Shown: positions 3,142 through 29,247 of the stretch, piece after piece | How positions within the stretch are numbered: the first letter of the stretch is position 1 | Layout of the letters: the number at the start of each line of letters is the position of its first letter | IMG/VR virus record: IMGVR_UViG_3300028735_000003 | Location: 289,766-353,765 of that record | Length of the DNA: 64,000 nt | Reading direction: 5' to 3' (one strand) | The notes under the pieces: model-generated | What the model was told of the DNA's origin: nothing | The model's input: the letters and a program-made list of their open reading frames with translations, nothing else | The model's database searches: none | Translations under genes and position numbers: made by a program

Positions 3142-3232
3142 ACCAAATCCTTATTAGACAACTTATGTTCAGTCGCATACGCCCAATGTAAATATTCAAA
3201 AAAACTGCACAAGTTCTACAAAATATTTAATA

Positions 3233-3676
3233 TTAGAATAATTTATCAAATATTCTGTCGGATTTTCTGTTTACAATTTCTATAATATTCTGTATTGCTT
3301 TTTGTTTAAAACACCAATTTGTTCTTCCACAATCACATGTTAAATATTCATAATAATCATTTTTAATATCTAAACCGTGTTTATGATGAACGCTGGAATC
3401 ATATGACTTATATGATGGATCAAATGATAATAATGATATGTTCTTAAAATCTCTTGGTGACTCAATATAATAAAAGTCGCTACACATTCTATCAGTATTT
3501 CTTACCACCCACCTAAATGCACTTAAGAAGTGTACTATATCTTTTTGATGTACATTTAATCTGGTTTTAAAATAATAAGTTGGTGGAGATGAGCAATATT
3601 TGCATCTTGCACGAGCCAAAAAAGTTGATGATAACTTAATATGTATTCCATCTTTATATTCGTTTCTTTTTGACAT
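3233..3676 (-). CDS. hypothetical protein with CxxC/CxC motifs
   Basis: 147-aa ORF, start overlaps stop of upstream ORF; CKYC and CDC. Confidence 0.6.
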   Translation of the reverse strand: MSKRNEYKDGIHIKLSSTFLARARCKYCSSPPTYYFKTRLNVHQKDIVHFLSAFRWVVRNTDRMCSDFYYIESPRDFKNISLLSFDPSYKSYDSSVHHKHGLDIKNDYYEYLTCDCGRTNWCFKQKAIQNIIEIVNRKSDRIFDKLF

Positions 3677-5016
3677 TATTCGTATCTTTTGCCTAAAAGA
3701 TCAAGCGCACTATCTACAATCTTTTTCCTGATTCTGTTAATATATACCATGCCGCCCATTTGATAGTGTGGTGGTACACGAAGATGTGTTACTGTAACCT
3801 CTGTGCCAGGCAATATATCTTGCATTTTGATCTTAGAAAACCCATAGCTCTTTACATTGGCTAGCAGAGGTTCTTTCGTAGTTTTATCAATCACATTCAA
3901 AAGCTTTCCAATATAAAATGGCTGAGAATAGGAGGCTTTTCTTCCTCCAATATAAAATTCTTGCGTGTTGTTTTTTATATCAAGTTTATCATTTACTACA
4001 GCATCAAATACACTTATTCCGTCGAATATATGTAAATTAGGATCTAATAAAGAATCTACCCTATAGATCTTACCCCTTTTCTTAAAACAGAATGGGAATG
4101 AATCTTCCAACAACCTAATATACTCTTGAAAAATCTTGTTCTGAAAGCCACCAGTACGTCTTTTATGCAAAAGATACTCAACAATTTCTTCCGGATATAT
4201 CTCCAGCATGTTCTTAAAAGCCTGATAAACTAGTACTTTATGAATTAAAGTAAAATCCGTTCCATTATATGGAACATTATTGCTTTGATTGTCAATAATA
4301 TCTTTTAATAGTCTTACATTATTATCTAGTTCTTCATTACGCTTTAATTGTGTATGAGAATCTATACTTAATAAGCTATTATCTACTTTTATAACAAGAT
4401 CTGTGTCTCCGAAAAATCTTTCCGGATTTGTTTGTGAACTTGGATGGTTCATCTTTTTTAGATCTGTTATGTTACCAACAAAATAACAATCCAAGTACGG
4501 ACAAGAAATCGTATCAGAACCGCCATATATTGGCTTTGGAATAAATCTATTACAATTTGGGCATTTATAACCATTCTTGTTGTGATGCTTAAACGATTTA
4601 AAAAAGCTCTGTTTTTTATGGTCTGTTGTTGATAAGTATGCGCGTGAACACTCATCACATTTAAATATATTGCCTGTAGGTATAATAAGATTGGTCTTAC
4701 ACAAGAACAAACAACCGGGACATAGATATTCTATGGTTTTCTTATAAGATTGCGCCGCAAGTTGCTTTGCAAATGTATTAGATATATAGAATAAATATGA
4801 GTCTACGCCCTCAGTGGAATTATTATTATTGACAAATGTCACACAACCAGATCTTAATTTACCTATTAATTCTGATATAAAGGCATCAAAAGATAAATTA
4901 GTAGCGTATGGATTAGATACTCTATGCAGAGTAGATAACCCTCTATCATACCTTTCCAAAAAATCTTGAACTATAGCATCAATATCTGATAGATTTAACT
5001 GACTAGTTTCTTCCAT
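3676..5016 (-). CDS. hypothetical protein with four Cys pairs (probable zinc fingers)
   Basis: CPGC, CDEC, CPNC, CPYLDC in a 446-aa ORF overlapping ftsK. Confidence 0.7.
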   Translation of the reverse strand: MEETSQLNLSDIDAIVQDFLERYDRGLSTLHRVSNPYATNLSFDAFISELIGKLRSGCVTFVNNNNSTEGVDSYLFYISNTFAKQLAAQSYKKTIEYLCPGCLFLCKTNLIIPTGNIFKCDECSRAYLSTTDHKKQSFFKSFKHHNKNGYKCPNCNRFIPKPIYGGSDTISCPYLDCYFVGNITDLKKMNHPSSQTNPERFFGDTDLVIKVDNSLLSIDSHTQLKRNEELDNNVRLLKDIIDNQSNNVPYNGTDFTLIHKVLVYQAFKNMLEIYPEEIVEYLLHKRRTGGFQNKIFQEYIRLLEDSFPFCFKKRGKIYRVDSLLDPNLHIFDGISVFDAVVNDKLDIKNNTQEFYIGGRKASYSQPFYIGKLLNVIDKTTKEPLLANVKSYGFSKIKMQDILPGTEVTVTHLRVPPHYQMGGMVYINRIRKKIVDSALDLLGKRYE

Positions 5017-6016
5017 TTAACCTACCAAAAAAATTGCAAACTTCAGCAGCATCTGTATATGCAATCTGGAATCTTTCCAAAAATCTTAAATGATCTTTTA
5101 GTAAAGCATCACCCATTCCATACAAATGTTCTGCACCAATAGTGTCTAATATAATCTTAGAATCGACATGACTAGCTACTTGACATGCGATACGAACTGG
5201 AAAATTAGATTTTATTGTTCCATCAATAATATTAGCTGATGGACGCTGAGTAGATAAAACTATAGAAATCTTAGCCGCTCTACACTTTTGCGCTAAACGA
5301 CATAGTTTAGTGTAGAATTTATTATCGGCGTCTTGTAATATAATGTCAGCAAACTCATCAATCATCAATACGACATATGGAATATGTGAAGATGGTATTC
5401 CTTTTTTTAGTAGTTCGTATCTGAACTCCATCACCTTTAGCAATGTATCTAAAGTATTAATTGTATCTTTATATGTATAACCGACTTGTACATTCTTGAA
5501 ATTATACTTTTCATATTCATAAAATTCAATGCCCTTTGGATCTATCAAAAATGTAAAAACATTGTTATAGTTCATAATATTAGCGATTAGGTTATGCATC
5601 AGTGTACTCTTGCCTGAGCCAGTGGTTCCAGCAATAATCATATGAGGATTCTTAGCTAAATCCATCCAAACACGCTTTCCAAAAATATCTTGCCCCAATA
5701 GGCAAATCACATCACCATCTGGAACTTCATCGTCAACAGCAAAGTACTCAAATAGATTTAATGTCGAAGTTCTACGTGTAACAAATTCCAATCTCACAAT
5801 ACCTTCGTCATAAAGTACTTTTATTGTAGGTCTTCCTGGCGCCTTAAGTGACATGGAAATTTCATCACAATATTTATGGACGTCTTTAACTTTGGCGCCC
5901 CGTTCTAAAACCAAATCATAGAATGCATAGTTATCAGTGTTTTTGTAATTTATACAATTAGCCCTAATATGAAGAGATTTTAGAATCTCATTCATTCTAG
6001 CAACATTATCCATCAC
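5003..6016 (-). CDS. ftsK: FtsK/SpoIIIE-family DNA translocase motor domain (no membrane anchor)
   Basis: PHMIIAGTTGSGKS, LIDPK, Walker B LMIDEFAD, STQRPS, NFPVRIA, LYGMGDAL. Confidence 0.9.
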   Translation of the reverse strand: MMDNVARMNEILKSLHIRANCINYKNTDNYAFYDLVLERGAKVKDVHKYCDEISMSLKAPGRPTIKVLYDEGIVRLEFVTRRTSTLNLFEYFAVDDEVPDGDVICLLGQDIFGKRVWMDLAKNPHMIIAGTTGSGKSTLMHNLIANIMNYNNVFTFLIDPKGIEFYEYEKYNFKNVQVGYTYKDTINTLDTLLKVMEFRYELLKKGIPSSHIPYVVLMIDEFADIILQDADNKFYTKLCRLAQKCRAAKISIVLSTQRPSANIIDGTIKSNFPVRIACQVASHVDSKIILDTIGAEHLYGMGDALLKDHLRFLERFQIAYTDAAEVCNFFGRLNGRN

Positions 6017-6085
6017 TACACCTCTGAGATAGATACCCCTCTATTTCAGTAGAAATATAATCACGAATTTAGTACGTGCAAGGGC

Positions 6086-6493
6086 TCAGTATTTTACTAA
6101 ATTGTTATATTTTCTAGCAATAATTTTTTTTAATTCAGATTCAGTGGGGGTAATAAAGCCAACTTTATCGCCCACCTTTATATTAGCACTATCTATTGTA
6201 CCAAATGGAAATTCTACAACCAAATCACTAGGCTGATCTTCTCCGACAGTATGTGTAGTGAACGGTTCTCCAACACATATTTGCGTAATTTTTCCATTAC
6301 AGCAGAACACAATGTCTAATGGGCTTGGCGTATTTTTCATCCAAAATTTATTAATCCTAGGCGAAGAATATACAAAAGACATGATTGGCGGTGGAAATGG
6401 CTCAAACATCAATCCCATAGATTGTTCATCTTCGGATATTGCCAATAATGTAGGAAATACATTATCATTGATATATATGTAACCATGTTCCAT
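6086..6493 (-). CDS. DUF192 family protein
   Basis: GLMF and FWMKNTPSPLDIVF signature. Confidence 0.85.
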   Translation of the reverse strand: MEHGYIYINDNVFPTLLAISEDEQSMGLMFEPFPPPIMSFVYSSPRINKFWMKNTPSPLDIVFCCNGKITQICVGEPFTTHTVGEDQPSDLVVEFPFGTIDSANIKVGDKVGFITPTESELKKIIARKYNNLVKY

Positions 6494-6504
6494 TACTTAT
6501 TGCC

Positions 6505-7995
6505 TCATCTAGACGTATCCACTGGAAAAGTTATTCTTGGAACCAATCTTTCAGCCAATTGTCTATTCTTACGGCTCATGATCAATTTATCAAGTCTTGT
6601 CTTTTGATCTAAAGGTAGATTACTAGTATCTAGTTGCATTGTAGACAATATAGATTCCAAACTTTCTTTCATTACAAAATAAGGTTTTATGATGCGCTCA
6701 CTCAGTAACTCTGTAAGCTTATCTGGAATAAAATCTTTTTCAAGTTCATTCATAAACTCATCTAAACCTTTTCTCATATCTTCAGCATAATTATACGCCA
6801 ATAATCTGCTTGAATTCGTTTTTCTAGTAATAATAGATCTTAGCAATTTACCATGCATTTTGCTAAGCAAATAATCTGCTTGAACTTCTAAACCAGAACC
6901 AGAATAATCTTCGAATGCAATAGCAGATAGTTCAGCAATCTCAGATAATGATGTCGCATTTGTGTTTCGTACAGAATTTAAACCCATCAAAATCGCATTA
7001 TATGTGGAAACTATTTGCTCTGCTAGAATGGTTTTCATTTTAGCATTATCTGTATTAAGATATTTATCTAATAACGAAATAATTTCAACTCTCATGGATT
7101 GATCCATATCCAAGAATAAAGTGGAAGCCTTTTGCCAATCTGGTATAATCTTGGTATCCACTTCTTGAATGATTCTATTCGCTATAGATTCAGTAGATTT
7201 ACTAGGTGCTGCTAGCGGGATTTCTCTAGTACCAATTGGGGTTACTTCTGATGCACCTCCGGATGTTCTTTCTGGCGATTTTTCCACTACATTTGGTTTG
7301 GGTTCCATGTCTTCAAGTTTTTTTGCAGCTACTTGCAAAGATTGAAACATTTCATTCCATCTATTCTCAATTTCTATAAGAATAGAATTTGCTTCTTCAA
7401 GTCCCTCAAAATCATCACTAAAGGATTTAAACTTTACTATATTGGATTGAAATTTAGAACACAACTTATATATTTGATGTGCCGAAGTTAATAGACTAAT
7501 TCTTGCTCTACGTTTGATAGCAGCAGCACTATTACCAAATCTCGGTCCCCTTAGCGTTGATAAGAATCTAGTTAAAGGATTTGATCCTACTGAAATTAAT
7601 TCTGCCATTTCTACACTAGCTGACAATGGTAATGACAATTGTTTAGTTAAATCTGGTGACACTGGAGTTTCTGGCGAAGCAGCGGGTTGTTTAGGTCTCT
7701 TCTTCCTTCTAGTTTGAGAATATGCAATTTGTGCTGCAATTATATCATTTCCTTCGTTTACAATTTCTACAAAATCTTTACCTAACACACCAAGTATGGT
7801 TGCCGGATCTTTTGGAATAGGATCAGTTATCCTAGATCTTTCCATTAAAAACTTAGATGGCCAACCGTTCATCATCTTTTTCAGATGAATAAGATCATCA
7901 ATGAATTCTGACACTTTCTTGTTCCATCTGGCTTTGCGCTCTCTAAGAGATTGCTGAACAGGATCAGATGATTTTTTTTGTGCTGTAACAATCAT
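6505..7995 (-). CDS. hypothetical helical protein
   Basis: 496-aa ORF, no recognised family. Confidence 0.7.
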   Translation of the reverse strand: MIVTAQKKSSDPVQQSLRERKARWNKKVSEFIDDLIHLKKMMNGWPSKFLMERSRITDPIPKDPATILGVLGKDFVEIVNEGNDIIAAQIAYSQTRRKKRPKQPAASPETPVSPDLTKQLSLPLSASVEMAELISVGSNPLTRFLSTLRGPRFGNSAAAIKRRARISLLTSAHQIYKLCSKFQSNIVKFKSFSDDFEGLEEANSILIEIENRWNEMFQSLQVAAKKLEDMEPKPNVVEKSPERTSGGASEVTPIGTREIPLAAPSKSTESIANRIIQEVDTKIIPDWQKASTLFLDMDQSMRVEIISLLDKYLNTDNAKMKTILAEQIVSTYNAILMGLNSVRNTNATSLSEIAELSAIAFEDYSGSGLEVQADYLLSKMHGKLLRSIITRKTNSSRLLAYNYAEDMRKGLDEFMNELEKDFIPDKLTELLSERIIKPYFVMKESLESILSTMQLDTSNLPLDQKTRLDKLIMSRKNRQLAERLVPRITFPVDTSR

Positions 7996-8075
7996 ATATT
8001 AATGAACAAATATTACTATTTAATGGCTATACCCACACTATCTAAGTAGTACACCAGACAACACAAAATAACAAA

Positions 8076-8657
8076 TCATATTACATGATCAATTATGCCA
8101 TATTTCAAAGCTTCATTTGGTTCCAGAAATAAATCCCTTTTGCAATCTTCCTTTACTTTATTCAAATCATTTCCAGTACTATCTGCTAACATCTTCATAA
8201 GTTTATCATTATTCTTCTTAGCGAATTCAAAATAATTTTTCGAATTAACCTGGTCATCTCCAGGTATAGGAAATTCGAATTGAATACCATGGATCATGAT
8301 TTTAGAATTTTTGTAAGCATATCTTTTGCCCTTAGTACCGGATGCCAATAATATCGCTGCGGCAGAAAACGCTTTACCTAAACATATTGTTTTTACAGGG
8401 GCTCTGATCATATTAATAACGTCATAAATTTGCACTAACGCATCTCCATCTCCACCATTTGAATGTATATAAATACTAATATCATCGGTTGGGCTCATAT
8501 TATCATAATACAATAATAAAGCCGACAATTCTGATGCCACCTCTTTTGTAATACCTTCCTTAAGAAATATTATTCTGTCTTTTGACAAAAAAACATATGA
8601 TGTGTCATATTTTGTGTTCTTTAATAGTAAAAGATTCTCTGCTTCATATAATTTCAT
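8076..8657 (-). CDS. clpP: ATP-dependent Clp protease proteolytic subunit, intact Ser-His-Asp triad
   Basis: IHSNGG, GKAFSAA (Ser), IMIHG (His), RDLFL (Asp), YGIID. Confidence 0.93.
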   Translation of the reverse strand: MKLYEAENLLLLKNTKYDTSYVFLSKDRIIFLKEGITKEVASELSALLLYYDNMSPTDDISIYIHSNGGDGDALVQIYDVINMIRAPVKTICLGKAFSAAAILLASGTKGKRYAYKNSKIMIHGIQFEFPIPGDDQVNSKNYFEFAKKNNDKLMKMLADSTGNDLNKVKEDCKRDLFLEPNEALKYGIIDHVI

Positions 8658-8669
8658 AATACAAAAACC

Positions 8670-9254
8670 TTATTTCCTAAAAGGAACCACCTTATCTATA
8701 AACCCTCTTTTAAGTGCTTGACGACTATCCATAAAAACAAGTCTTTCATATTTAGACATTGCTTGTTTTAATGATATATTAGTTTTTCTTGCAATTATAT
8801 CCATCATCTTTTTATTATCGCTTAAAGAATGGTTTAGCATGGTTTGAGCATCAGTTATATCAGAATGATGTACCCAGCTATTAACTAACTGCCCTGCGCA
8901 AATAATAGAATTCTTAGTTGCCAACCTCATACCAGGTGTTCCAGCAACCAATAAAATGACTGCCTCTTTCATAGCTGAGCCGATACATACAGTCTCTATT
9001 GGAGAATCGATCATAGTAATCATATCATAAATTGCCAAAGCACTTCTTATGTCTCCTCCTCTAGAATTAATAAATATGGTTATTTTATTATCAGAATCTT
9101 CACTATCTAGTAATAATAATGTGGCTGATATATCTGCAGCCATGTCATCATCAATATCTCCAGATACGAATAATATTCGATCATTAGATAACTTCTGAAA
9201 CACATCAATAGATACTTCGCCTTCTTCAGTATTTTCAGTTACTATAGTATTCAA
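8670..9254 (-). CDS. ClpP-fold protein lacking the catalytic triad (ClpR-like)
   Basis: DRILF, INSRGG, GFIDKV retained; GSAMKEA (Ser>Lys), ICAGQ (His>Gly), ERLVF (Asp>Leu). Confidence 0.88.
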   Translation of the reverse strand: MNTIVTENTEEGEVSIDVFQKLSNDRILFVSGDIDDDMAADISATLLLLDSEDSDNKITIFINSRGGDIRSALAIYDMITMIDSPIETVCIGSAMKEAVILLVAGTPGMRLATKNSIICAGQLVNSWVHHSDITDAQTMLNHSLSDNKKMMDIIARKTNISLKQAMSKYERLVFMDSRQALKRGFIDKVVPFRK

Positions 9255-9616
9255 CTTTGTTCCCTATTCCTCTGTTTTTCCTCTATCTCTCGATCTTCTG
9301 CACAATCAACACATATTTCGACGTAAGGATTGAATAACAATCTTTTCTCTGGAATATCTTCACCACAATCATCACAAATTCCATATGTGCTGTTTTTCAG
9401 TTTAGCTAATGCGGTCTCAATCTGAACAAGCTTTTGAGCATTTCGTGTACTTAGTTGGTTTTGCATTTCAATTAATAAATTACCCTGGATTTCGTCATAT
9501 TCATCTCCGTCAGTGTCAATCTCTATATCCTGTTCCATATTAGCTGTAATTATAAGCTGACGTTTCTGCGCCAGCAATTCTTCTTCAATCTTCTTAAGAA
9601 AAGCTTTACTTAACAT
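9251..9616 (-). CDS. dksA: DksA/TraR C4 zinc-finger RNA polymerase regulator
   Basis: Coiled coil with acidic tip DEYD; YGICDDCGEDIPEKRL...CVDC. Confidence 0.9.
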   Translation of the reverse strand: MLSKAFLKKIEEELLAQKRQLIITANMEQDIEIDTDGDEYDEIQGNLLIEMQNQLSTRNAQKLVQIETALAKLKNSTYGICDDCGEDIPEKRLLFNPYVEICVDCAEDREIEEKQRNREQS

Positions 9617-9996
9617 TACATAAACCTCAAGTCAGAAATGGGTACTGTAATAGTACCAGTTGGTGCAGATGCTTTCTTACCATCTACTCGTTTAATAAAA
9701 ACGAGATATGCCTGATTTTCAGGCTCTTTTAACAAAAAGGCATTAACATACCAATCATTGAATATTGCTTTCTTGGTCTGATTAGAAAATTTTAACATTC
9801 TTGTAGTCTCCAGTACATGCGATTTTTTCTTATAAAAAGGACCAAGAATTTCTTTTGCTTTTAAAGATGTTTGCTCACTGAACAAATTTCCAGCTTCATC
9901 CTGAGATGAAGCGGCAATAATTCTATTAATTAGATCGCCATTTTCTCCAATAGAACTACATACATATACTACCTGTCTGGCACCCTTTCTACTCAT
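9616..9996 (-). CDS. hypothetical protein
   Basis: 126-aa ORF translationally coupled in operon. Confidence 0.6.
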   Translation of the reverse strand: MSRKGARQVVYVCSSIGENGDLINRIIAASSQDEAGNLFSEQTSLKAKEILGPFYKKKSHVLETTRMLKFSNQTKKAIFNDWYVNAFLLKEPENQAYLVFIKRVDGKKASAPTGTITVPISDLRFM

Positions 9997-10329
9997 TTAG
10001 CCATCCTTAAACGTCCTGTCAATATCTAAAAAATCACAGATTTTTTTTCTAATTTTTGTAACAAGTGAAAATCGCAATATTTTGTTACCATTAGATTGAA
10101 GAACCTTATTATACCTAACATCATGATATCGTCTTGGTTTCATCTGCTTTAATGAAATAGTTCCAAAATTAACTATCTTTATGTCTTTTCCATTATTCAA
10201 ATCCTTAATCAACTCGTCAAATAATATTGATATAACACTATAAACATGTGCGTGATGAATAGCCCTATTAATTCTTAGATTAACATATTGCCATAGTATT
10301 TTTCTACTTATGCTTGTTGGTATATTCAT
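9997..10329 (-). CDS. HU/IHF-like DNA-binding protein
   Basis: GKDIKIVNFGTI...PRRYHD...FSLVTKIRK matches the HU/IHF pattern. Confidence 0.8.
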   Translation of the reverse strand: MNIPTSISRKILWQYVNLRINRAIHHAHVYSVISILFDELIKDLNNGKDIKIVNFGTISLKQMKPRRYHDVRYNKVLQSNGNKILRFSLVTKIRKKICDFLDIDRTFKDG

Positions 10330-11327: not shown

Positions 11328-11638
11328 CGTTTAAATCCAGATATTATTTTAATTATAGAAGATTGTACATCAGCAATTGAAAAATCAAGTTTTGGCAATG
11401 CATTATATTCTCTCTCGATATATGCCTCGAAATCGAATGTGTCTCCATTTTCCCTCCTCATACCTAATTCCTCCATACATACTGTGGCTAGTTTATCACT
11501 AAATCCCAAATACCTATCACAAATAACAATATCACATAGTTGTATCATACTATAATTGTGCAGATTTTTTATAATCTCGTCTAAATTAAGTTCTTCAATT
11601 TGATAATCTTCAAGATTATTGTCGTCTTCGTCGATCAT
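11324..11638 (-). CDS. hypothetical protein
   Basis: 104-aa ORF overlapping both neighbours. Confidence 0.55.
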   Translation of the reverse strand: MIDEDDNNLEDYQIEELNLDEIIKNLHNYSMIQLCDIVICDRYLGFSDKLATVCMEELGMRRENGDTFDFEAYIEREYNALPKLDFSIADVQSSIIKIISGFKR

Positions 11639-11975
11639 TTTTCCTCATTTTTGGTGGAGTAGACATTTGTACTTTCAAAGAAGGTATTATATGCCCTCTT
11701 CGATGTTTATCAAAAAATAACAATTTCGTGTCAAAAAATAAATTATTGAAATTCAAAACTTTTCCTAACAGCAATAGCTCCCTAAAACTACTAAACACAG
11801 CAGTTACAATTAAACTGATTTCATATTTAGATATTAGAGGATATCTTGAATGAATTCGATTCACTAAATCTTCATTATATCTAATACCAACTGGATAATG
11901 CGTATTCAATAGATCTATTATCTCATTGGTATCTGTATTAAAGAAGAAAGGTTTAACTATTTTTTGTTTCTTCAT
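11616..11975 (-). CDS. divergent HU-like protein
   Basis: LVNRIHSRYPLISKYEISLIVTAVFSSFRELLLLGKVLNFNNLF follows the HU helix1-helix2-beta pattern. Confidence 0.5.
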   Translation of the reverse strand: MKKQKIVKPFFFNTDTNEIIDLLNTHYPVGIRYNEDLVNRIHSRYPLISKYEISLIVTAVFSSFRELLLLGKVLNFNNLFFDTKLLFFDKHRRGHIIPSLKVQMSTPPKMRKNDRRRRQ

Positions 11976-12119
11976 ATATCCACACTTACTTTGGTAGCCA
12001 CAAAATTTTCTCTATGATATGTATATACTAACTCCCCCTATTATATATCCCCATGCGTTTGTCGAGAGTCAGTTCAGGTAATTTCAAATAATAATAGCTA
12101 TTTTTTATAAAAATGCCAC

Positions 12120-12758
12120 TTGATATATAAAGTTGGCATGACAATGCGTATTATGTCAAATATTAATGAAGAAATCCTTGTTGTTGGATCCATATACGAC
12201 AATTTTGAGAAAATAGAATCAATAGAAAAGTTAATACACAAATATGCTGCCGTTATTTTCAATGGCAATTTATTGTATCCATTTGATAATATTTCGTCTG
12301 TTTATACTAGAATATCTATAATGAAAGCACTTCTTCAAACTGGTAAAGTGATATACAATTTAGGAGCATATGATTTGAAATTATCTAATATATTATACCA
12401 AAATAATGACCATATAGATATTCAGCAATGGATTATATCTAATCCAAATGTAATTAACATAGATTTTGCTAACTCCTCATCTGTACTAATCATTAGCGGT
12501 GGATTAACGCCAAACATAAATAACAAAAAATTGTTAACTGATAATATTGAAGTTAGTTTTGTATCCAAAATAAATGGTAAACCATGGCAAGTATATTACA
12601 ACGGTATGTTGGGATACGTTATATCTAATAATCCACTTGGAAATAAGCCTATGTTTTACTCTAATGCAGCGCAAATAGGAATACAATATAAACATAAGTG
12701 CGATGTCTATGCCCAAGAAATAAATAAGTTTGGTCTAAAAAACATAATTAAGCTGTGA
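12120..12758 (+). CDS. calcineurin-like metallophosphoesterase-fold protein with degenerate metal ligands
   Basis: VVGSIYD / IFNGNLLYP / LGAYD / ISGGLTP align to GDxHG / GDxxDRG / GNHE / HAG motifs. Confidence 0.65.
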   Translation: MIYKVGMTMRIMSNINEEILVVGSIYDNFEKIESIEKLIHKYAAVIFNGNLLYPFDNISSVYTRISIMKALLQTGKVIYNLGAYDLKLSNILYQNNDHIDIQQWIISNPNVINIDFANSSSVLIISGGLTPNINNKKLLTDNIEVSFVSKINGKPWQVYYNGMLGYVISNNPLGNKPMFYSNAAQIGIQYKHKCDVYAQEINKFGLKNIIKL

Positions 12759-12808: not shown

Positions 12809-13075
12809 ATGGATAAATACCATAAAGTTACAGCACTATATTTAGCTGCTGAAAAATTAGTTGGTTATGATACTCCAGCCTATGATCTTCATACCGCATT
12901 ATTAAACAAAGTATTGCTTAAGTATAAAAATTTAGAGGAGTCTACAATCAAGATGTCCTTAGCCATCGAAAAAGATTTTCTTAAATTCTCTAAGATGGTA
13001 TACAATTGTTTTGAAGATGAAGGTAAGCTAACTTTAGGACTTGATGATATAATAATGTCAAGTGTGATGAAATAA
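12809..13075 (+). CDS. hypothetical protein
   Basis: 88-aa ORF with upstream AGGA. Confidence 0.55.
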   Translation: MDKYHKVTALYLAAEKLVGYDTPAYDLHTALLNKVLLKYKNLEESTIKMSLAIEKDFLKFSKMVYNCFEDEGKLTLGLDDIIMSSVMK

Positions 13076-13100: not shown

Positions 13101-13442
13101 ATGAATACTGACAAAGAGGTTTTACAAAAACTATTTAAGATTGCCAAAAATCAACAGAAGATTATTAGAAAACTTGCTCAAACGTCTTCTCAAGTGCAAG
13201 ATATTAGAGCAGAAGTTAACAACCTTATCGTATCACTTGGTTCTAAAGTTCCAAGAGGAACTGTATGTTTAAAGGCTTATTTTTATCCGATTGAGAATAT
13301 AGTAGATTCAACAATTAAATTACAAAACGCCCAACCATTGGATGAGAATAATAAAAAAATAAGAGCTATATTAGCTTCAGCTATCGCTGATATGAAGAAA
13401 ATACCTGTGGGTAATGTCAAGATTATTTTAGCATTAGGTTAA
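13101..13442 (+). CDS. hypothetical protein
   Basis: 113-aa ORF with upstream AGAGGA. Confidence 0.6.
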   Translation: MNTDKEVLQKLFKIAKNQQKIIRKLAQTSSQVQDIRAEVNNLIVSLGSKVPRGTVCLKAYFYPIENIVDSTIKLQNAQPLDENNKKIRAILASAIADMKKIPVGNVKIILALG

Positions 13443-14461: not shown

Positions 14462-14486
14462 GATATACAATATAACATGTCTTTTG

Positions 14487-14558
14487 CATCCCTAGCAGGA
14501 CTCGAACCTGCATATATCAGTTTAGGAAACTGACGCCTCTCCTTTAGGCTATAGGGAC
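14487..14558 (-). tRNA. tRNA-Arg(CCT)
   Basis: Acceptor GTCCCTA/TAGGGAT, anticodon arm TCAGT-TTCCTAA-ACTGA, T arm GCAGG-TTCGAGT-CCTGC; CCA not fully encoded. Confidence 0.92.
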
Positions 14559-16771: not shown

Positions 16772-17133
16772 TGGTGGAGGATCGGGGGATCGAACCCCGG
16801 TCTTGAATACTTCGCGATTAAACTCATTCACAAACTTAGTTGATGTTTATCTGTCATCAGCACCAGTGAAAGAATTCGCTCTAACTGGCTAGTTACTGTT
16901 CATTTCGAATGTTAAATCCGTAACCGACAAAACATTCTATCCTTAGTGTGTTGAGCATTCATCAGATACCAAGAATATCTCTCCTAGAACACTCCAATTA
17001 AGCAGCTTGTGCCATTGGAACAAATGCATTGTCGTTTGCATTTATACGTTGATTGCTTTTTAACGAGTCCCTGCAATCATCCCCGGTTTGCATTTAAATC
17101 GCTATTTACCCAATCGAAACCAAATTATCCCCC
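16772..17133 (-). ncRNA. ssrA: tmRNA, tag peptide (A)ANDNAFVPMAQAA*
   Basis: 5' GGGGGAT pairs with 3' ATCCTCC-A-CCA including G3:U70; T arm CGGGG-TTCGATC-CCCCG; resume context ATAAAT-GCA; tag ORF 16998-17039. Confidence 0.96.
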
Positions 17134-17380: not shown

Positions 17381-18190
17381 TTATATGCTGTCACTTCTAA
17401 AGATGTCTGCTCCATTTTTGAATATATTAGAAAGAAATGACTGATCTTTTGTAAATATTGGAAGTTCTGTGTTAATAGCCCATTTATTTTTGACTACACC
17501 GTTAACAATTTTAGGAATCTTGTAGCAAGCAGCGCCGCGCCTAAATGATGTATGATATTCATTGAAATCTATGTCGCACTCTTGTTTCAATAAATCAATC
17601 TTTTCATCTATACTCAAATCGCTCAACATCTCTTTTATTGTTGTTTTGTCATATTTCTTTAATAACTCATAGAAACATGCAAACTGAATAGATAAATAAA
17701 AATTACTTTGTTGTTTGTAAATAATTGTATTAATGGCTTCTGCTATTGTTGGCACAACAAACACTTGTGACGTAAATAGGGCATCACCCATTAAATTCAA
17801 CTTAGTATTTACAGCAAATAAATTGAAATGTTGTGTTGCTATTGATGAAGTTATAGAGCATATATTTTGTAACTTATTATCATACCATGGCAATGTTTCT
17901 TGTGTTTGGTCATTACGCACAACAATAGTTATTTCGTCATTATGTTGATAAGCGAACAAAGCGCCATCAATTTCCATACATAACTTTACTGTTGTTGATA
18001 ACATACCCTCAGCAAATTCAGTACAATAAGGTTTGTCAAGCAGCGATGTAATCTTATGAAACGAGCGCCCATTAATATTTATTATTAATGGCACTTTGTT
18101 CAATAAACGATAATTAGACATATCGATATAGGAATCGATCCTGTCTTTAAGCTTAATAGTATACATATAGAATAATATAACCAAGCACAC
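17381..18190 (-). CDS. tRNA(His) guanylyltransferase Thg1-like protein (probable start 18166)
   Basis: ININGRSFHK, YQHNDEIT, FRRG motifs; first catalytic Asp appears as Asn. Confidence 0.88.
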   Translation of the reverse strand: MCLVILFYMYTIKLKDRIDSYIDMSNYRLLNKVPLIININGRSFHKITSLLDKPYCTEFAEGMLSTTVKLCMEIDGALFAYQHNDEITIVVRNDQTQETLPWYDNKLQNICSITSSIATQHFNLFAVNTKLNLMGDALFTSQVFVVPTIAEAINTIIYKQQSNFYLSIQFACFYELLKKYDKTTIKEMLSDLSIDEKIDLLKQECDIDFNEYHTSFRRGAACYKIPKIVNGVVKNKWAINTELPIFTKDQSFLSNIFKNGADIFRSDSI

Positions 18191-18626: not shown

Positions 18627-19163
18627 TTACCCGTTTACAACAATTAATATATCATCCCATCGATTGTTTATATGCCTGTTATCAACTACTATAGTTTTAT
18701 TTTGCAAAGAATGAGGTAAAACGTTAATAATGTTTTTTGTCCAATTTATAGATGGAATGTCTTCAATAATCATTACCCCATCTGGATTTAGTTTTTGAGA
18801 ATAATACCTAGCACAAAATATCATACTTTCATATGTATGAGGACCATCATCAATAATCATATCAAATTTTATATTTTTGAGTTTATCATCAATAAATGAT
18901 GCATCATATGCATTAGCTGTAAAATGTATCATTCTGTCTTTAAGAATAAAATCAGGAGGAAGAGGGTTGATATCTACGCTATAAATGTTTGAATTAGGTA
19001 AAAAATCGTGCCATAATAATATCGAGCCTCCAAGCCAAACACCAATCTCAAATAAATTTTTAATACTATCTTTTCTTGGAGATAGTATTTTATCATAAGT
19101 ATCAAGATAGGTATGAGACGTAAACTTATCTGTTTTATAATTGGTTGCTATTTCTCTAAACAT
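18627..19163 (-). CDS. class I SAM-dependent methyltransferase
   Basis: LFEIGV..GGS, YSVDI, FDMIIDDGPH, GVMIIED. Confidence 0.85.
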   Translation of the reverse strand: MFREIATNYKTDKFTSHTYLDTYDKILSPRKDSIKNLFEIGVWLGGSILLWHDFLPNSNIYSVDINPLPPDFILKDRMIHFTANAYDASFIDDKLKNIKFDMIIDDGPHTYESMIFCARYYSQKLNPDGVMIIEDIPSINWTKNIINVLPHSLQNKTIVVDNRHINNRWDDILIVVNG

Positions 19164-19862
19164 TTATTGCCTATAAGATGATTGGGCGCCATGTCCAATT
19201 GTTGCGCACGCTGAATTTAAAAGATATGCGGCTCTATACCCATATTTCATAGCATGCTCATTACAACGAAACTCATCTATCCATCTAGCCTCGTCAGGTC
19301 TCTGAAATTCTGAATATCCATTTGGAAACATTTTATTGTAGTCTTCAGTTCGTCTTAGACCAGCATTGAAACTAAATCCACACCAATAGCTACAATGAGG
19401 TGAAATTATTTTCTTATAATAAACATTTGTTGATGTTTTTAGAGTTTCAGACTCTAAATAATTATTTATATCACCATGACTAACACGATAATTGTCCGCA
19501 TGTCTAATCCATATTTGATGGACACTTTTATCTTCTTCTAAAATATCAATTGAATCTTGTATAAAATTAGCATTACCATAAAATAGATAATCATCCTCAC
19601 TATGGAAAATATAATCGCTTGTTACTGTTTTATACATTTTATCTATTGATCTAACTTGACCGATATTTATTTCGTTGAAAATAAACTCTACTTTATTAGA
19701 ATAATTAGTAGAAATCAAATTTTTTATCTCTGGATTTGTAGAATCATCAATAACAATAATTCTTTCTATAGGAAACTTATTAAGAGACAAAAAACTATCA
19801 ATTGTTTTCTTTAATAGACTAAATCTATTATAAGATGTTATGCACACAGTAACTGTTTTCAT
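19164..19862 (-). CDS. glycosyltransferase family 2 / GT-A fold
   Basis: VCITSYNR, IIVIDD, YIFHSEDD. Confidence 0.85.
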   Translation of the reverse strand: MKTVTVCITSYNRFSLLKKTIDSFLSLNKFPIERIIVIDDSTNPEIKNLISTNYSNKVEFIFNEINIGQVRSIDKMYKTVTSDYIFHSEDDYLFYGNANFIQDSIDILEEDKSVHQIWIRHADNYRVSHGDINNYLESETLKTSTNVYYKKIISPHCSYWCGFSFNAGLRRTEDYNKMFPNGYSEFQRPDEARWIDEFRCNEHAMKYGYRAAYLLNSACATIGHGAQSSYRQ

Positions 19863-19868
19863 TTTGAA

Positions 19869-20018
19869 TCACAACTGAATAAACCAAGATGTTTCTATTA
19901 TTTCAAATCTATATTCGACAACTTTATTTACTCCAAGCCAGACATTATAGCCATGTTCTGCAATAATTCCATTCAGTTTTCTACTATATGTAGAATTATC
20001 TTGCAATGAGTTAATAAC
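19869..20018 (-). pseudogene. C-terminal relic of a class I methyltransferase
   Basis: Start-less frame ...NGIIAEHGYNVWLGVNKVVEYRF...SWF resembles the GGiIagHDY..GV..AV.E C-terminus. Confidence 0.5.
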
Positions 20019-20020
20019 AT

Positions 20021-20584
20021 TTACTTTTCAAAAATCATAATAGTATTTTTAAACCACGGAGCAGAATTATCGATACAAGATCTTGCGCTTAAGCTGTCTT
20101 GTTCTAAATATTTAAAGCCTCTATCAGTCATCTTTTTTATAACTTCATGATTATCATAACAATTAACATGACCATATCCTGGTTGATTTCTTATTGCCCA
20201 TGACATTATTAATTTACCATTACAACACGATGATACATTATTTAATAATGTATCTTCAAATTGTGCTGGAACATGTTCAGCAACTTCCAGAAAAATACAA
20301 TTACCCTTATCAGTAACAGTAAAAGATTTCGTTAAATCTTGTTGTTTAATATTTTGAAATACTTTTTGTTTTGGAATATCACCCTCAAACCCAGTTAAAT
20401 TCTTAAAGCCAGCTTTTTGTAAAGCTAATAAATAATTACCAAGTCCGCAACCCAAATCATATAATGGCTTTTCTTTGTCATCTTTTAGATATTCTATAAT
20501 CCATTTTGCCAATACAGGGCAATGAACATGATGAATATGAGCAGAATCGCCAGACCAAAATCCAGTGTTTGATATTACTGACAT
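20021..20584 (-). CDS. class I SAM-dependent methyltransferase
   Basis: LYDLGCGLG, FLEVAEH, QPGYGHVN. Confidence 0.85.
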   Translation of the reverse strand: MSVISNTGFWSGDSAHIHHVHCPVLAKWIIEYLKDDKEKPLYDLGCGLGNYLLALQKAGFKNLTGFEGDIPKQKVFQNIKQQDLTKSFTVTDKGNCIFLEVAEHVPAQFEDTLLNNVSSCCNGKLIMSWAIRNQPGYGHVNCYDNHEVIKKMTDRGFKYLEQDSLSARSCIDNSAPWFKNTIMIFEK

Positions 20585-21995: not shown

Positions 21996-22001
21996 TATAC
22001 C

Positions 22002-26552: not shown

Positions 26553-27824
26553 CTAATATATATCAACCATTTTAGAGATTGATAATATTTTATCTAAAAA
26601 AGAATCTCCCCAAGTTCCGCCCTTCTTATTTTTTAAGATAAAGTCTTTCATGTCAGACGACTTTTGATCGAACATAGAGAACATAGGGGCTGGCCATATA
26701 TCCTTATGATCTTTAACTAATAGAGCAAATGTCTTCTTGTCTCCAGGATTTATTTGATCTGCTGTAGACTTTAAGATTTTGTATGCGTGATCATAATTTT
26801 TAATTAAAAATTGAACGTTTCTCTTAATATTTACAATTCTATCGATAATTTCTGGAGGTAATGCCGTAATCACATCATCTTCCTTTTCTGCCAATATTAA
26901 TTCTAAACAACTTCTTTCAGAGGTTCCAAGGATATTTCTTACCTTATTAAATGCCACATATGAGGCGTTTTTTACTTTAACCCTATTGAATTTAGAGTCA
27001 CGAACCACAATACCTTCATGTTCCAAAGGATTCTGTCTTGAAACCCAATCCAATAGATTATTCAAACACGCAAACTTATATGCGTGTACGTGTGGAATTC
27101 CATACGTATTGATTTTATCAATATCAAGTTCATATAAAGAAGCACATTGTTTTCCGTCAACAACCGTTTCCATTCCATTTCCAACAAAACGAGCGGCTAT
27201 CAAAGTTATCCTTGTTTCTTTATAATCAAGAACTATTCTATTATATGGAGATGTTAGTTCAAAACAGTAGGTAATTTCCTTATCTAGATTAGATGTAAAA
27301 TCATCAAAAGACATCCCGATTGTATCTTTTATCGCTTTTTCGAATAAAGATCTGAATGTATAGAATCCACTGTCCAAAACAATATCTGCTTCTGGAACAG
27401 ATCTCGTTGCCACACACCATTTTTTCGTAAAGCAATCAAAATACAATATAGTTAGCGTTCCATCTAATTTTTCCAAAAATGCTAGATTTGAATCAGACCA
27501 ATTGATTTTTGCCGCAGCGTCTTGCCCGTGATTAAAGAATCTCATCATCGGGAATGCTAGAATTCTCGTTTCACCAGGAACGATTGCATCATAAATTCTA
27601 CGGTTATCAACCTCAACAGATTGAGACAAGAAAGATCTTCCATCAACCGCTGCCAGGATAAGTCCACGACATTCTTGTGCTAAAGGGTTTGATTCTCTAG
27701 CCTCAAGTTGATCATAGTTCAGAGAAAACTTGTGCCCAGATTTTGAAAATGACGTATATACTCCATGTTCTCTTGCCAGATCTAAAAATGAATGCGTCCT
27801 AAGATATTCTTGTACTAATAACAT
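26553..27824 (-). CDS. T4 Rnl1-like RNA ligase
   Basis: Motif I EKLDGT, FELTSPYNRIV, motif IV EGIVVRD, motif V KVKN. Confidence 0.88.
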   Translation of the reverse strand: MLLVQEYLRTHSFLDLAREHGVYTSFSKSGHKFSLNYDQLEARESNPLAQECRGLILAAVDGRSFLSQSVEVDNRRIYDAIVPGETRILAFPMMRFFNHGQDAAAKINWSDSNLAFLEKLDGTLTILYFDCFTKKWCVATRSVPEADIVLDSGFYTFRSLFEKAIKDTIGMSFDDFTSNLDKEITYCFELTSPYNRIVLDYKETRITLIAARFVGNGMETVVDGKQCASLYELDIDKINTYGIPHVHAYKFACLNNLLDWVSRQNPLEHEGIVVRDSKFNRVKVKNASYVAFNKVRNILGTSERSCLELILAEKEDDVITALPPEIIDRIVNIKRNVQFLIKNYDHAYKILKSTADQINPGDKKTFALLVKDHKDIWPAPMFSMFDQKSSDMKDFILKNKKGGTWGDSFLDKILSISKMVDIY

Positions 27825-28245: not shown

Positions 28246-29247
28246 TCAAAAATTACCAGGAGCAACTTGCCAACATTTCAACCCTTTGGACCTCCAAAAA
28301 TCAACAACTTGCTTTCTATCATCTAATACCATGAGAACGTTATATTTTCCAGCAATATATTCGTTATACAGTTCTTCCTTGATGATAGAATCCTTACGAT
28401 TGTCACCAGTTTTCCGCATGATCAGGTCATACTTGAACGTTACGTTCTTATTTAAGAACGTTTCTGTCTGTGGTCTATACTTATCCTCACGACCAGAACA
28501 AAAGATCACATGATATCCAGCTCTTGCCAAAGCTTCAAGTGTAATTACAACGGCTTCATTTGGAGTATCATTATCAGCACTAGATGCATCGTAAGGATTC
28601 CTGATATGAGCACCAGGATAACGATTATCAAAAGAGCCGTTTTTTAACATTGGATTGAACAACGATATTGTTCCATCCAAATCACACACAACAGCCCAAT
28701 TCAGTTCTGGATTGTTATTTGTAACATTTGAATCGTTCATAGTTTGATTATAGTCCCCAAAAACTTCGACTCTGCCGTTATAAAACTTATGTTTTTCTCC
28801 GCCAGTTTGTTCCCACATTTTATGAATTACTTCTTCAGGGATTAATGCATAACCTTCTCGCTTCGCGTTCCTAGCGATTGCTTCATCTAGATCTACATAG
28901 AATGGTTTTTCCATTACCATACAGGATATTCCTAAATTTTTTACTAATTTACAGACATCATCGAAGTTTCTACGATTAAGATTAGTATCATCTATAATAA
29001 CATTTTTCCCACTTTTTAAAGCAGAAGTAATAATATGATTCCTAGTAGAAACAACTAGCCTCTCATTTTGTTGTGAGTAAACATAGTTTGACATCATAAT
29101 ACGAAGATCGTCCCTATTAACCCTTACAGTTCCAGTAGGATCCTTCTTTACTTCTTCTTTTGCCCAAGTAGATTTGCCAGAGGCGACGATACCTACAGTT
29201 AAGATAACCTTTAACATAACTTGGTCAGCTTTCGGTATAAAATTCAT
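28246..29247 (-). CDS. pseT: polynucleotide 5'-kinase / 3'-phosphatase (T4 PseT-like)
   Basis: P-loop GIVASGKST, RDDLR, HAD motif DLDGT, DDRKQVV. Confidence 0.92.
   Translation of the reverse strand: MNFIPKADQVMLKVILTVGIVASGKSTWAKEEVKKDPTGTVRVNRDDLRIMMSNYVYSQQNERLVVSTRNHIITSALKSGKNVIIDDTNLNRRNFDDVCKLVKNLGISCMVMEKPFYVDLDEAIARNAKREGYALIPEEVIHKMWEQTGGEKHKFYNGRVEVFGDYNQTMNDSNVTNNNPELNWAVVCDLDGTISLFNPMLKNGSFDNRYPGAHIRNPYDASSADNDTPNEAVVITLEALARAGYHVIFCSGREDKYRPQTETFLNKNVTFKYDLIMRKTGDNRKDSIIKEELYNEYIAGKYNVLMVLDDRKQVVDFWRSKGLKCWQVAPGNF

What the first reader, a model, noticed from the sequence alone, without database searches (positions are those of the whole stretch)
12120..12758. Metallophosphoesterase fold with every metal ligand replaced
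Seen: spacing and hydrophobic pattern follow the calcineurin-like motifs, but DxH>SIY, GDxxD>GNLLY, GNH>GAY and H>S, in an uninterrupted 212-aa ORF transcribed against the local gene direction. Established: these residues are required for catalysis. Inference: a pseudo-enzyme retained for binding, for example a sponge for nucleotide immune signals or phosphoproteins.
Basis: partly seen in the sequence, partly recalled or inferred. Interest (0 to 1): 0.6.

Follow-up and report, generated by a model that had tools for sequence, protein, structure and literature searches.

The report
Dead phosphatase kept by huge phages
This gene of an uncultured 350-kb phage encodes a protein with the lambda-phosphatase/ApaH fold that has lost all its catalytic residues yet is strongly conserved, so it is a real pseudo-enzyme of unknown, probably non-phosphate-binding, role.

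Summary
The ORF at 12120-12758 (+) is real; its likely start is ATG 12138. Its model (pLDDT 94) has the metallophosphoesterase fold: Z 20.2 to an ApaH-like phosphatase, 18.3 to the PnkP phosphatase domain, 16.9 to lambda phosphatase.

This is not one decayed copy. About 130 cluster representatives form one clade of dead or partly dead forms, with half-decayed ones at its base. dN/dS within it is 0.04-0.05. The gene keeps one position in huge-phage contigs of 45-470 kb. Intact orthologues sit in that position but in the opposite orientation.

The "sponge for phosphorylated ligands" idea is weakened. The basic residues conserved in the active clade are also gone, the former ligand positions vary, and a roughly 24-residue segment is deleted.

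Phages with the dead or partial form mostly carry a T4-type kinase-phosphatase (8 of 11 records). Phages with the intact form do not (0 of 10). This suggests functional displacement, but it rests on a single evolutionary contrast.

The present role is unknown. My best guess is a non-catalytic scaffold.

The parts
12138..12758 (+). Coding sequence of the dead metallophosphoesterase-fold protein.
12186..12200 (+). Remnant of motif I: GSIYD in place of GDxHE. The ligands Asp and His are replaced by Ser16 and Tyr18.
   Evidence: codons read
12261..12281 (+). Remnant of motif II: NGNLLYP in place of xGDxYDK. The bridging Asp is replaced by Asn42, the second Asp by Tyr45 and the Lys by Pro46.
12363..12374 (+). 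Remnant of motif III: GAYD in place of GNHE. The ligand Asn is replaced by Ala75 and the general-acid His by Tyr76.
12495..12503 (+). Remnant of motif IV: SGG in place of H[AG]G. The ligand His is replaced by Ser118.
12585..12632 (+). Clade signature W-Q/H..Y.G..GY, shared with the active relatives, followed by the motif V remnant SNN in place of SGH (His replaced by Asn163). Arg155 of the active clade is Met here.
12016..12075 (.). Conserved non-coding element in the divergent intergenic region. It is a C-run/TATA/C-run box followed by the invariant TGTCGAGA...AGTTC. It occurs once in the window and is present upstream of the gene in the related loci.
12809..13075 (+). Second gene of the + cassette: an 88-aa remnant of a Dps-family mini-ferritin. 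An in-frame 42-residue deletion removes the His/Asp/Glu motif, and the C-terminus is truncated. Most relatives have a 146-149 aa version.
13101..13442 (+). Third gene of the + cassette (113 aa, unknown). Only its N-terminal helix is conserved among relatives.
11616..11975 (-). First gene of the divergently transcribed block: four small genes, an HU-like gene, one further unknown gene, DksA-type zinc finger, two ClpP genes and onward.
28246..29247 (-). T4-type polynucleotide kinase-phosphatase (P-loop kinase plus HAD phosphatase). It is the candidate replacement for the lost activity.
26553..27824 (-). T4 Rnl1-type RNA ligase. Its homologue lies 1.5-2.1 kb downstream of the intact phosphoesterase in two complete relatives.

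Best explanation
The gene encodes a catalytically dead descendant of a stand-alone phage phosphoesterase of the lambda-phosphatase (NinI) / ApaH / PnkP-phosphatase branch of the metallophosphoesterase superfamily.

Shown: the fold is kept. All six metal ligands, the general-acid His and the conserved basic residues of the active clade are gone. The loss happened stepwise at one fixed genome position in a lineage of huge phages, with motif I lost first. It is seen together with an inversion of the gene, which placed it in a small operon ahead of a Dps-like gene. The dead form has since been kept under strong purifying selection.

Inferred: the ancestral activity was probably RNA-end healing or an ApaH-like nucleotide hydrolysis. 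It became dispensable when this lineage acquired a T4-type kinase-phosphatase. The protein survives in a non-catalytic, metal-independent role that does not use the old phosphate site. Most likely it is a rigid protein-binding scaffold or adaptor, as VPS29 is in retromer. The partner is unknown.
For: Fold.

Homology and residue pairing with intact relatives.

Active relatives match PHROG 246 (NinI-like Ser/Thr phosphatase) and, weakly, the ApaH, PrpE and Pnkp models.

Clade structure: in the tree of 159 representatives, 131 dead or partial rows form one clade (SH-aLRT 96), with partial forms such as PYDNHHH and PYDD.HH at its base; the 21 rows with all 7 sites intact lie outside it (7-site counts over 167 aligned representatives).

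Purifying selection: dN/dS is 0.049 and 0.040 in two independent close pairs. Divergence is comparable to neighbouring conserved genes.

Positional orthology and inversion.

Loss of basic residues, variable former ligand positions and the 24-residue deletion.

No intact paralogue of this clade occurs in the own genome.

T4-type HAD kinase-phosphatase: found in 0 of 10 records with an intact form, three of them at least 96% complete. Found in 8 of 11 records with a dead or partial form, including this window.

In two complete relatives the intact enzyme lies 1.5-2.1 kb upstream of an Rnl1-type RNA ligase on the same strand.

Precedent for a dead fold of this kind acting as a scaffold: VPS29 (PMC3101248).
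Against: No partner was found. The one complex prediction tried, with the Dps-like neighbour, gave no answer.

No expression data could be obtained.

The kinase-phosphatase correlation follows one clade boundary, so it is a single evolutionary contrast. One 97%-complete phage with a dead form lacks that gene.

The ancestral substrate is not established. ApaH-like, protein phosphatase and RNA-healing roles all fit the weak family matches.

I had no model coordinates, so I could not map conservation onto the surface. Conserved Asn, Asp and Tyr near the old site (N40, N72, D77, N162, Y18) could form a new site.

dS in the close pairs is high (1.4-1.7), so the ratios are approximate.
Confidence: 0.55

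Rival explanations
1. Ligand sponge or substrate trap. The dead fold still binds a phosphorylated small molecule (cyclic oligonucleotide, Ap4A, ADP-ribose derivative) or a phosphoprotein, and sequesters it.
For: Pseudo-enzymes often keep substrate binding. The active relatives are nearest to ApaH-type Ap4A hydrolases. The loops of all five motifs still hold invariant residues: G15, N40, G41, N72, D77, G119, G120, S161, N162. The clade-specific W..Y.G..GY loop is kept in both active and dead forms.
Against: Binding of phosphate in this fold depends on the two metals and on Arg/Lys. All of these are lost, and no basic residue is conserved in the dead clade, while several acidic ones are (D77, E136, E192). 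The former ligand positions vary, so there is no fixed pocket chemistry. A roughly 24-residue segment next to the site is deleted. Many of the invariant residues are Gly, which fits loop geometry as well as ligand contact.
Confidence: 0.1
2. It works with a specific neighbour or pathway: as a partner or regulator of the Dps-like mini-ferritin encoded just downstream, or as a non-catalytic subunit of the phage RNA-repair set (kinase-phosphatase, RNA ligase, RlaP, Thg1-like).
For: The phosphoesterase and Dps-like genes are adjacent in active lineages (head to head) and in dead lineages (tandem, 20-60 nt apart). The Dps-like proteins of the two lineages share 37% identity. One database protein fuses a Dps-like N-terminus to a C-terminal phosphoesterase half. 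RNA-repair genes lie in the same window. The intact form sits close to the RNA ligase in relatives.
Against: The window's own Dps-like gene is a remnant, and its closest relatives lack it. The dead phosphoesterase in those relatives still shows dN/dS 0.05. The complex prediction gave no answer. Nothing tested here bears on binding to the repair enzymes.
Confidence: 0.2
3. It is still an enzyme with new chemistry, using the conserved Asn, Asp, Glu and Tyr residues, or a single weakly bound metal, for a reaction other than binuclear phosphoester hydrolysis.
For: Strong purifying selection. New invariant polar residues arose at the old site: N40, N72, N162 and Y18. Basal members keep only the second metal site (PYDNHHH), which shows the fold can persist with a half site.
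Against: Position 16 is Pro in about half of the clade and position 42 is Gly in about a third. Positions 75, 76 and 118 are variable, which is not what a catalytic centre looks like. I know of no precedent for such an activity in this fold; this statement rests on my own knowledge.
Confidence: 0.1
4. It is a decaying gene (pseudogene in progress) or a chance ORF.
For: It evolves somewhat faster than the neighbouring enzymes: 61% and 43% identity to two relatives, against 57-77% for the two ClpP genes and the FtsK-like gene. The substitutions D>N, H>Y and H>N follow the A+T bias of a 30% G+C genome.
Against: The frame is intact in all 149 representatives found. dN/dS is 0.04-0.05. There are 24 invariant columns among 27 sequences at about 40-65% identity. 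The model is very confident. Position and orientation are fixed in phages from 45 to 470 kb.
Confidence: 0.02

Closest known systems
Bacteriophage lambda Ser/Thr phosphatase (NinI, PHROG 246) and bacterial PrpA/PrpB
   Same: Same fold and size class (Z 16.9 to 1g5b). The intact relatives of this family match the NinI-like PHROG at E 1.4e-13. Both are stand-alone phage proteins of about 200-250 residues.
   Different: All six metal ligands, the general-acid His and the phosphate-binding basic residues are replaced. The protein itself matches no PHROG or Pfam model. It is about 40 residues shorter than its intact relatives.
ApaH and ApaH-like phosphatases (2qjc, 9ojd, 2dfj)
   Same: Best structural match (Z 20.2, 188 residues, rmsd 2.8). 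It is also the best sequence match of the intact relatives.
   Different: There is no metal site. The matches of the intact relatives to the ApaH models lie far below the curated cut-offs, so even the ancestors are not ApaH orthologues.
[quoted passage not shown]
   Same: Second-best structural match (Z 18.3). The Atlas structural neighbours include kinase-phosphoesterase-RNA-ligase fusions. Intact relatives lie next to an RNA ligase. This domain heals RNA 3' ends (PMC2190708).
   Different: It is stand-alone, not fused to a kinase or ligase. It is dead. In this phage the healing function is presumably carried by a T4-type HAD kinase-phosphatase.
VPS29 of retromer, and the B subunits of eukaryotic DNA polymerases (dead phosphoesterase folds used as scaffolds)
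   Same: A metallophosphoesterase fold kept without catalysis and used, in those cases, for protein binding (VPS29: PMC3101248; polymerase subunits: Aravind and Koonin 1998, as cited in PMC4104785).
   Different: They are not related within the superfamily beyond the fold. They are eukaryotic and have known partners. VPS29 still binds metals weakly. Here no partner is known, and the decay can be followed step by step among living relatives.

Membership tests
Metallophosphoesterase (calcineurin-like) superfamily, Pfam PF00149 | Two-layer beta-sandwich phosphoesterase fold | tested here: met
   pLDDT 94 model. Z 20.2, 18.3 and 16.9 to 2qjc, 4j6o and 1g5b over 185-192 residues.
Metallophosphoesterase (calcineurin-like) superfamily, Pfam PF00149 | Demonstrable homology to accepted members | tested here: met
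   hhalign probability 99.6%, E 1.3e-24, against 21 relatives; eight of those, plus one 3-of-7 relative, pass the PF00149 cut-off among the ten proteins scanned.
Metallophosphoesterase (calcineurin-like) superfamily, Pfam PF00149 | Five-motif signature DxH / GDxxD / GNH / H / GH that binds two metals | tested here: not met
   0 of 7 canonical residues: S, Y, N, A, Y, S, N.
Metallophosphoesterase (calcineurin-like) superfamily, Pfam PF00149 | Match to the family model above the gathering score | tested here: not met
   No Pfam match even at E<=10.
Metallophosphoesterase (calcineurin-like) superfamily, Pfam PF00149 | Metal-dependent phosphoester hydrolysis | not testable with these tools
   Needs purified protein.
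Lambda-phosphatase / NinI-like phage phosphatases (PHROG 246) | Match to the family profile | tested here: not met
   The protein matches no relevant PHROG. Its intact relative P0142 does, at E 1.4e-13.
Lambda-phosphatase / NinI-like phage phosphatases (PHROG 246) | Descent from such an enzyme (orthology by position) | tested here: met
   It occupies the same slot, between the Dps-like gene and the HU/DksA/ClpP block, as the intact forms.
Dead phosphoesterase-fold scaffolds (VPS29 type) | Catalytic residues lost while the fold is kept under purifying selection | tested here: met
Dead phosphoesterase-fold scaffolds (VPS29 type) | A defined protein partner | tested here: inconclusive
   One pair tried (with the Dps-like neighbour): the verdict was 'no answer'.
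Anti-defence nucleotide sponges (Tad1, Tad2, Acb2 type) | Conserved ligand pocket able to hold phosphates | tested here: not met
   There is no conserved Lys or Arg. The former ligand positions vary. Acidic residues are conserved.
Anti-defence nucleotide sponges (Tad1, Tad2, Acb2 type) | Fold or sequence relation to a known sponge family | tested here: not met
   The listed top structural matches are all phosphoesterases.
Anti-defence nucleotide sponges (Tad1, Tad2, Acb2 type) | Measured binding of a signalling nucleotide | not testable with these tools
   Needs binding assays.

The most novel reading that the evidence does not exclude
The dead phosphoesterase has a new specific function in infection. 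It might be a non-catalytic subunit that recognises damaged RNA ends or a host factor and recruits the phage repair or Clp machinery. It might instead be a decoy that binds and blocks a host protein that normally engages ApaH/PrpA-type phosphatases. If so, this would be the first phage pseudo-phosphatase with a defined role, with living intermediates that show how it arose.
Probability: 0.12. Interest if true: 0.75.

Novelty: new member of a known kind. Interest (0 to 1): 0.45.

Why it matters
Pseudo-enzymes are well documented in eukaryotes, but I know of few described in phages (own knowledge; the one paper search made found none). In this family every stage survives in present-day relatives at one genome position: intact, half-dead (one metal site) and fully dead. 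Such a series is useful for asking how an enzyme fold is repurposed. It also gives a testable case of non-orthologous displacement: an end-healing phosphoesterase replaced by a T4-type kinase-phosphatase in huge phages that carry their own RNA-repair and translation-rescue genes. In practice, the family (about 150 clusters, all unnamed) could now be annotated as an inactive lambda-phosphatase/ApaH-like protein.

Tried and rejected
- Single-sequence searches (Pfam, PHROGs, PDB, NCBIfam) found nothing for the protein. A profile of the family against PDB sequences gave only chance-level matches.
- BLAST against isolated phage genomes, by DNA and by protein, found nothing.
- I considered a different register for motif III, with Y71-N72-L73 standing for G-N-H, because N72 is invariant and the model's helix starts at residue 75. 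MAFFT and hhalign both pair GAYD-LK with GNHE-LK, so I rejected it.
- I considered a purple-acid-phosphatase-like reading of GNLLY as GDxxY with a Tyr ligand. I rejected it because position 42 is Asn, Gly or Ser and position 45 is not invariant.
- Complex prediction of the dead protein with its Dps-like neighbour (the pair from locus L007) scored 0.00. The verdict was 'no answer', which is evidence neither for nor against binding.
I did not try another route, and read laying was not used.
- The conserved intergenic element was tested against Rfam with no match. It occurs once in the window. I read its reverse complement as a sigma-70-like promoter for the leftward operon. That is an interpretation only; no covariation test was run.
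- A second intact paralogue in the genome that could explain the loss: none of this clade was found. The only other phosphoesterase match, outside the window, lies in a 409-aa frame and was not characterised.
- No alternative genetic code was needed or used.

Full report
SETTING

The window is bases 289766-353765 of a 353,765-bp IMG/VR virus record with about 30% G+C and a CheckV completeness of 79%.

It has the gene content of an uncultured huge phage:
- a long minus-strand block with an AAA ATPase, topoisomerase IA, an FtsK/HerA-type ATPase, DUF192, two ClpP paralogues, a DksA-type zinc finger and an HU-like protein;
- a tmRNA and two tRNA-Arg genes;
- a Thg1-like gene;
- a T4 Rnl1-type RNA ligase, a T4-type polynucleotide kinase-phosphatase and an RlaP nucleotidyltransferase.

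Table 11 was used throughout. Nothing suggested another genetic code.

THE OBSERVATION

The frame from TTG 12120 to the stop at 12758 is open for 212 codons. Homologues start MTLRTLSN, which lines up with the window's MTMRIMSN. The likely start is therefore ATG 12138 (206 aa). The database gene call uses ATG 12144 (204 aa, P0002, the numbering used below).

Alone, the protein matches nothing in Pfam, PHROGs, NCBIfam or PDB sequences. It also matches nothing in isolated phage genomes.

A word-based search found 50 unnamed metagenomic homologues of about 200 residues at 37-65% identity. With an alignment of 27 of them, AlphaFold2 gave a model with pLDDT 94 and pTM 0.91.

Fold searches:
- Foldseek found 169 PDB matches at E<=1e-3; the listed top ones are all metallophosphoesterases.
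- VIA-align gave Z 20.2 to the ApaH-like phosphatase 2qjc (188 residues, rmsd 2.8), 18.3 to the phosphatase domain of C. thermocellum PnkP, 16.9 to lambda phosphatase and 16.5 to E. coli ApaH.
- The ESM Atlas and BFVD agree. The only named family member in BFVD is an uncharacterised protein of an uncultured Caudovirales phage.

RESIDUE ASSIGNMENT

The exhaustive profile search found 149 cluster representatives. The tail of that list is longer (214-258 aa). Eight fully intact members and one member with three of the seven residues pass the Pfam Metallophos cut-off among the ten proteins scanned, and the intact members carry GDxHE, GDxYDKG, GNHE, H[AG]G and SGH.

Profile-profile comparison of the dead family with 21 such intact relatives gives probability 99.6% and E 1.3e-24 over 204 columns. 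It pairs:
- S16 and Y18 with the Asp and His of motif I;
- N42 and Y45 with the two Asp of motif II;
- A75 and Y76 with the Asn and His of GNH;
- S118 with the motif IV His;
- N163 with the motif V His.

I had considered a different register for motif III, and the alignments do not support it.

A FAMILY-WIDE STATE, NOT ONE BROKEN COPY

Of 167 near-full-length representatives, 21 keep all seven residues, 124 keep none or one, and 22 are intermediate.

In a maximum-likelihood tree, 131 dead or partial rows form one clade (SH-aLRT 96). The partial forms lie at its base. One form has lost only motif I (state PYDNHHH). Several have also lost the GNH pair (PYDD.HH). The intact forms lie outside the clade.

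Two independent close pairs inside the dead clade give dN/dS of 0.049 and 0.040. dS is 1.4-1.7, so these ratios are approximate. Between the window and two relatives the protein is 61% and 43% identical, within the range of its conserved neighbours.

It is not met.

GENOMIC ANATOMY

In the 15 huge-phage loci fetched with the dead-family profile (contigs of 21-452 kb), and in the metagenome contigs examined, the gene sits on the opposite strand to a fixed block: DUF192, an unknown gene, ClpP, ClpP, DksA-like, an unknown gene, HU-like and four small genes. In most of these contigs it is followed, on its own strand, by a 146-149 aa gene and a gene of about 115 aa. After that the minus strand resumes.

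The 146-149 aa neighbour belongs to the Dps family of mini-ferritins. Its profile matches Dps entries in PDB down to E 2.8e-9. Its model (pLDDT 95.6) matches Dps structures at TM about 0.8.

Phages with an intact phosphoesterase (13 fully intact loci plus one variant, contigs of 70-459 kb) have the same gene order. There the enzyme points the other way, co-directional with the HU/DksA/ClpP block and head to head with the Dps-like gene.

The dead lineage therefore carries a single-gene inversion that placed the gene in tandem ahead of the Dps-like gene. The half-dead forms already have the inverted arrangement.

In this window the Dps-like gene is only a remnant of 88 aa. An in-frame deletion of 42 residues removes the His/Asp/Glu motif, and the C-terminus is cut. 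The closest relatives lack the gene altogether. One of the low dN/dS values comes from exactly those relatives. The dead protein therefore does not depend on the Dps-like partner.

WHAT THE SEQUENCE SAYS ABOUT MECHANISM

The active clade conserves Lys or Arg at ten positions: 46, 59, 73, 79, 82, 83, 113, 141, 155 and 170. These include the motif II Lys and Arg155, which by position correspond to the phosphate-binding arginines of this enzyme class (that correspondence rests on my knowledge of the PPP and lambda-phosphatase literature). In the dead clade these positions are basic in only 3-41% of sequences. No basic residue is conserved anywhere in it.

The former ligand positions are themselves variable:
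- position 16 is Pro or Ser;
- position 42 is Asn, Gly or Ser;
- position 75 is Asn, Asp, Arg, Ser or Lys;
- position 118 is Ser, Asn, Asp, Gly or Cys.

A segment of about 24 residues between motif IV and the W..Y.G..GY loop is deleted. The median is 11 residues against 35 in the active clade.

Three kinds of residue remain conserved:
- glycines of the motif loops (G15, G41, G119, G120);
- new asparagines (N40, N72, N162), Y71 and D77;
- a loop shared with the active clade (W148, H/Q149, Y152, G154, G157, Y158).

Without coordinates I cannot say which of these are exposed.

The pattern fits a protein that has given up its anionic substrate and keeps a stable fold for some other use. It fits poorly with a sponge for nucleotides or phosphoproteins at the old site.

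WHY CATALYSIS COULD BE LOST

This part is inference.

The intact relatives are nearest to NinI-like phosphatases (PHROG 246, E 1.4e-13). They match the ApaH, PrpE and bacterial Pnkp models weakly. The phosphoesterase domain of CthPnkp heals RNA ends, and both it and lambda phosphatase have 2',3'-cyclic phosphodiesterase activity (abstract of PMC2190708).

In two 100%-complete phages the intact gene lies 1.5-2.1 kb upstream of an Rnl1-type RNA ligase on the same strand.

A T4-type kinase-phosphatase with a HAD phosphatase domain was found in:
- 0 of 10 records with an intact enzyme, three of them at least 96% complete;
- 8 of 11 records with a dead or partial form, including this window (28246-29247) and the two records with the PYDNHHH form.

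This suggests that a T4-type enzyme took over end healing and freed the phosphoesterase. The split follows one clade boundary, so it counts as a single evolutionary event. One nearly complete phage with a dead form lacks the T4-type gene.

WHAT IT DOES NOW

This is not known.

I commit to a non-catalytic, metal-independent scaffold or adaptor role, by analogy with VPS29 (PMC3101248). My confidence in the whole statement is about 0.55. It is far higher (about 0.9) for "dead but selected phosphoesterase fold", and lower for the scaffold part.

Specific partner hypotheses remain open: the Dps-like protein, or the RNA-repair enzymes. The one complex prediction allowed gave no answer. Expression could not be checked.

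THE INTERGENIC REGION

Between the divergent starts (11976-12137) lies a roughly 60-nt element. It is more conserved than the flanking proteins. It consists of a C-run/TATA/C-run box followed, after 6-8 nt, by the invariant TGTCGAGA...AGTTC. It occurs once in the window, and in 18 of the 19 related loci tested upstream of the gene (the 8-mer was not found in L025). It is duplicated in locus L029.

Read on the minus strand it resembles a sigma-70 promoter: TCGACA, a 14-17 nt spacer, TATAAT or TATAGG, and a G-rich discriminator. That promoter would serve the leftward operon.

A G[AT]TATAT box lies 8-16 nt before the start codon of the dead gene. It may be its own -10 element, which would give a nearly leaderless transcript.

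Both readings are interpretations. Rfam finds nothing in this region.

VERDICT

The pseudo-enzyme reading is supported. The proposed sponge function is unlikely but not excluded.

The family is new and unnamed. Its kind, a dead metallophosphoesterase fold kept for a non-catalytic role, is known.

Noticed in passing
window 12809-13075 (+): The gene just downstream is an 88-aa remnant of a Dps-family mini-ferritin. Relatives have a 146-149 aa version with a His-x11-His...Asp-x3-Glu pattern. That pattern has the spacing of the Dps ferroxidase site as I remember it. Here an in-frame 42-residue deletion removes it, and the C-terminus is truncated.
   Followed up: yes
window 12016-12075, and about 12121-12129: A roughly 60-nt non-coding element with the invariant TGTCGAGA...AGTTC is conserved across phages whose proteins are only 35-65% identical. 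It occurs once in the window. It may be a promoter for the leftward HU/DksA/ClpP operon. A G[AT]TATAT box sits just before the start codon of the dead gene.
   Followed up: partly
window 17381-18190, 26553-27824, 28246-29247, 33075-35045 (all -): An RNA-repair set: a Thg1-like tRNA 5'-end repair enzyme, a T4 Rnl1-type RNA ligase, a T4-type kinase-phosphatase (HAD), and an RlaP nucleotidyltransferase that also carries a LAGLIDADG domain.
   Followed up: partly
window 16772-17132 (-), 14486-14558 (-), 45448-45524 (-): A phage-encoded tmRNA (Rfam 117 bits; tag peptide ANDNAFVPMAQAA) and two tRNA-Arg genes (anticodons CCT and TCT).
   Followed up: no
window 12-10329 (-): A block of genes typical of cellular chromosomes: AAA ATPase, topoisomerase IA, FtsK/HerA-type ATPase, DUF192, two ClpP paralogues, a DksA-type zinc finger and an HU-like protein. 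The block from DUF192 through the HU-like gene keeps its order in all related huge-phage contigs examined.
   Followed up: partly
window 29754-31895 (-): A 713-aa protein with a LAGLIDADG domain (residues 250-305) ahead of a short AAA_2 (Clp/Cdc48-type) match. This may be an intein or a homing-endonuclease insertion.
   Followed up: no
window 44454-45038 and 50536-50988: Direct repeats of about 0.5 kb at 96-98% identity, about 6 kb apart, each covering a short ORF. This may be a recent segmental duplication or the ends of a mobile segment.
   Followed up: no
window 46406-46573 and 47143-47615: In-frame tandem repeats with periods of 42 nt and 78 nt inside two + strand ORFs (46096-47031 and 47205-47585).
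   Followed up: no
window 51797-63998 (-): Five tandem paralogues of 580-887 aa, 62-73% identical to one another. The one that was scanned is made of leucine-rich-repeat-variant and HEAT repeats.
   Followed up: partly
window 18627-23206 (-), 36473-37624 (-): A cluster of three family-2 glycosyltransferases and three methyltransferases, followed by a 167-aa RIO/ABC1-like mini-kinase. An adenylosuccinate synthetase lies further on.
   Followed up: no
protein P0173; loci L029, L007, L012: P0173 joins a Dps-like N-terminus to the C-terminal half of an intact phosphoesterase. L029 carries two copies of the conserved intergenic element, 400 nt apart. Related phages carry an IS200/IS605 TnpA-TnpB pair (L007) and a PARP-like gene with WGR, PARP regulatory and PARP catalytic domains (L012) a few kb from the locus.
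   Followed up: no
own genome outside the window, G000:C1:282246-282899 (-): This is the only other metallophosphoesterase match in the record. It lies in a 409-aa frame and passes the Pfam cut-off. I did not characterise it further.
   Followed up: no
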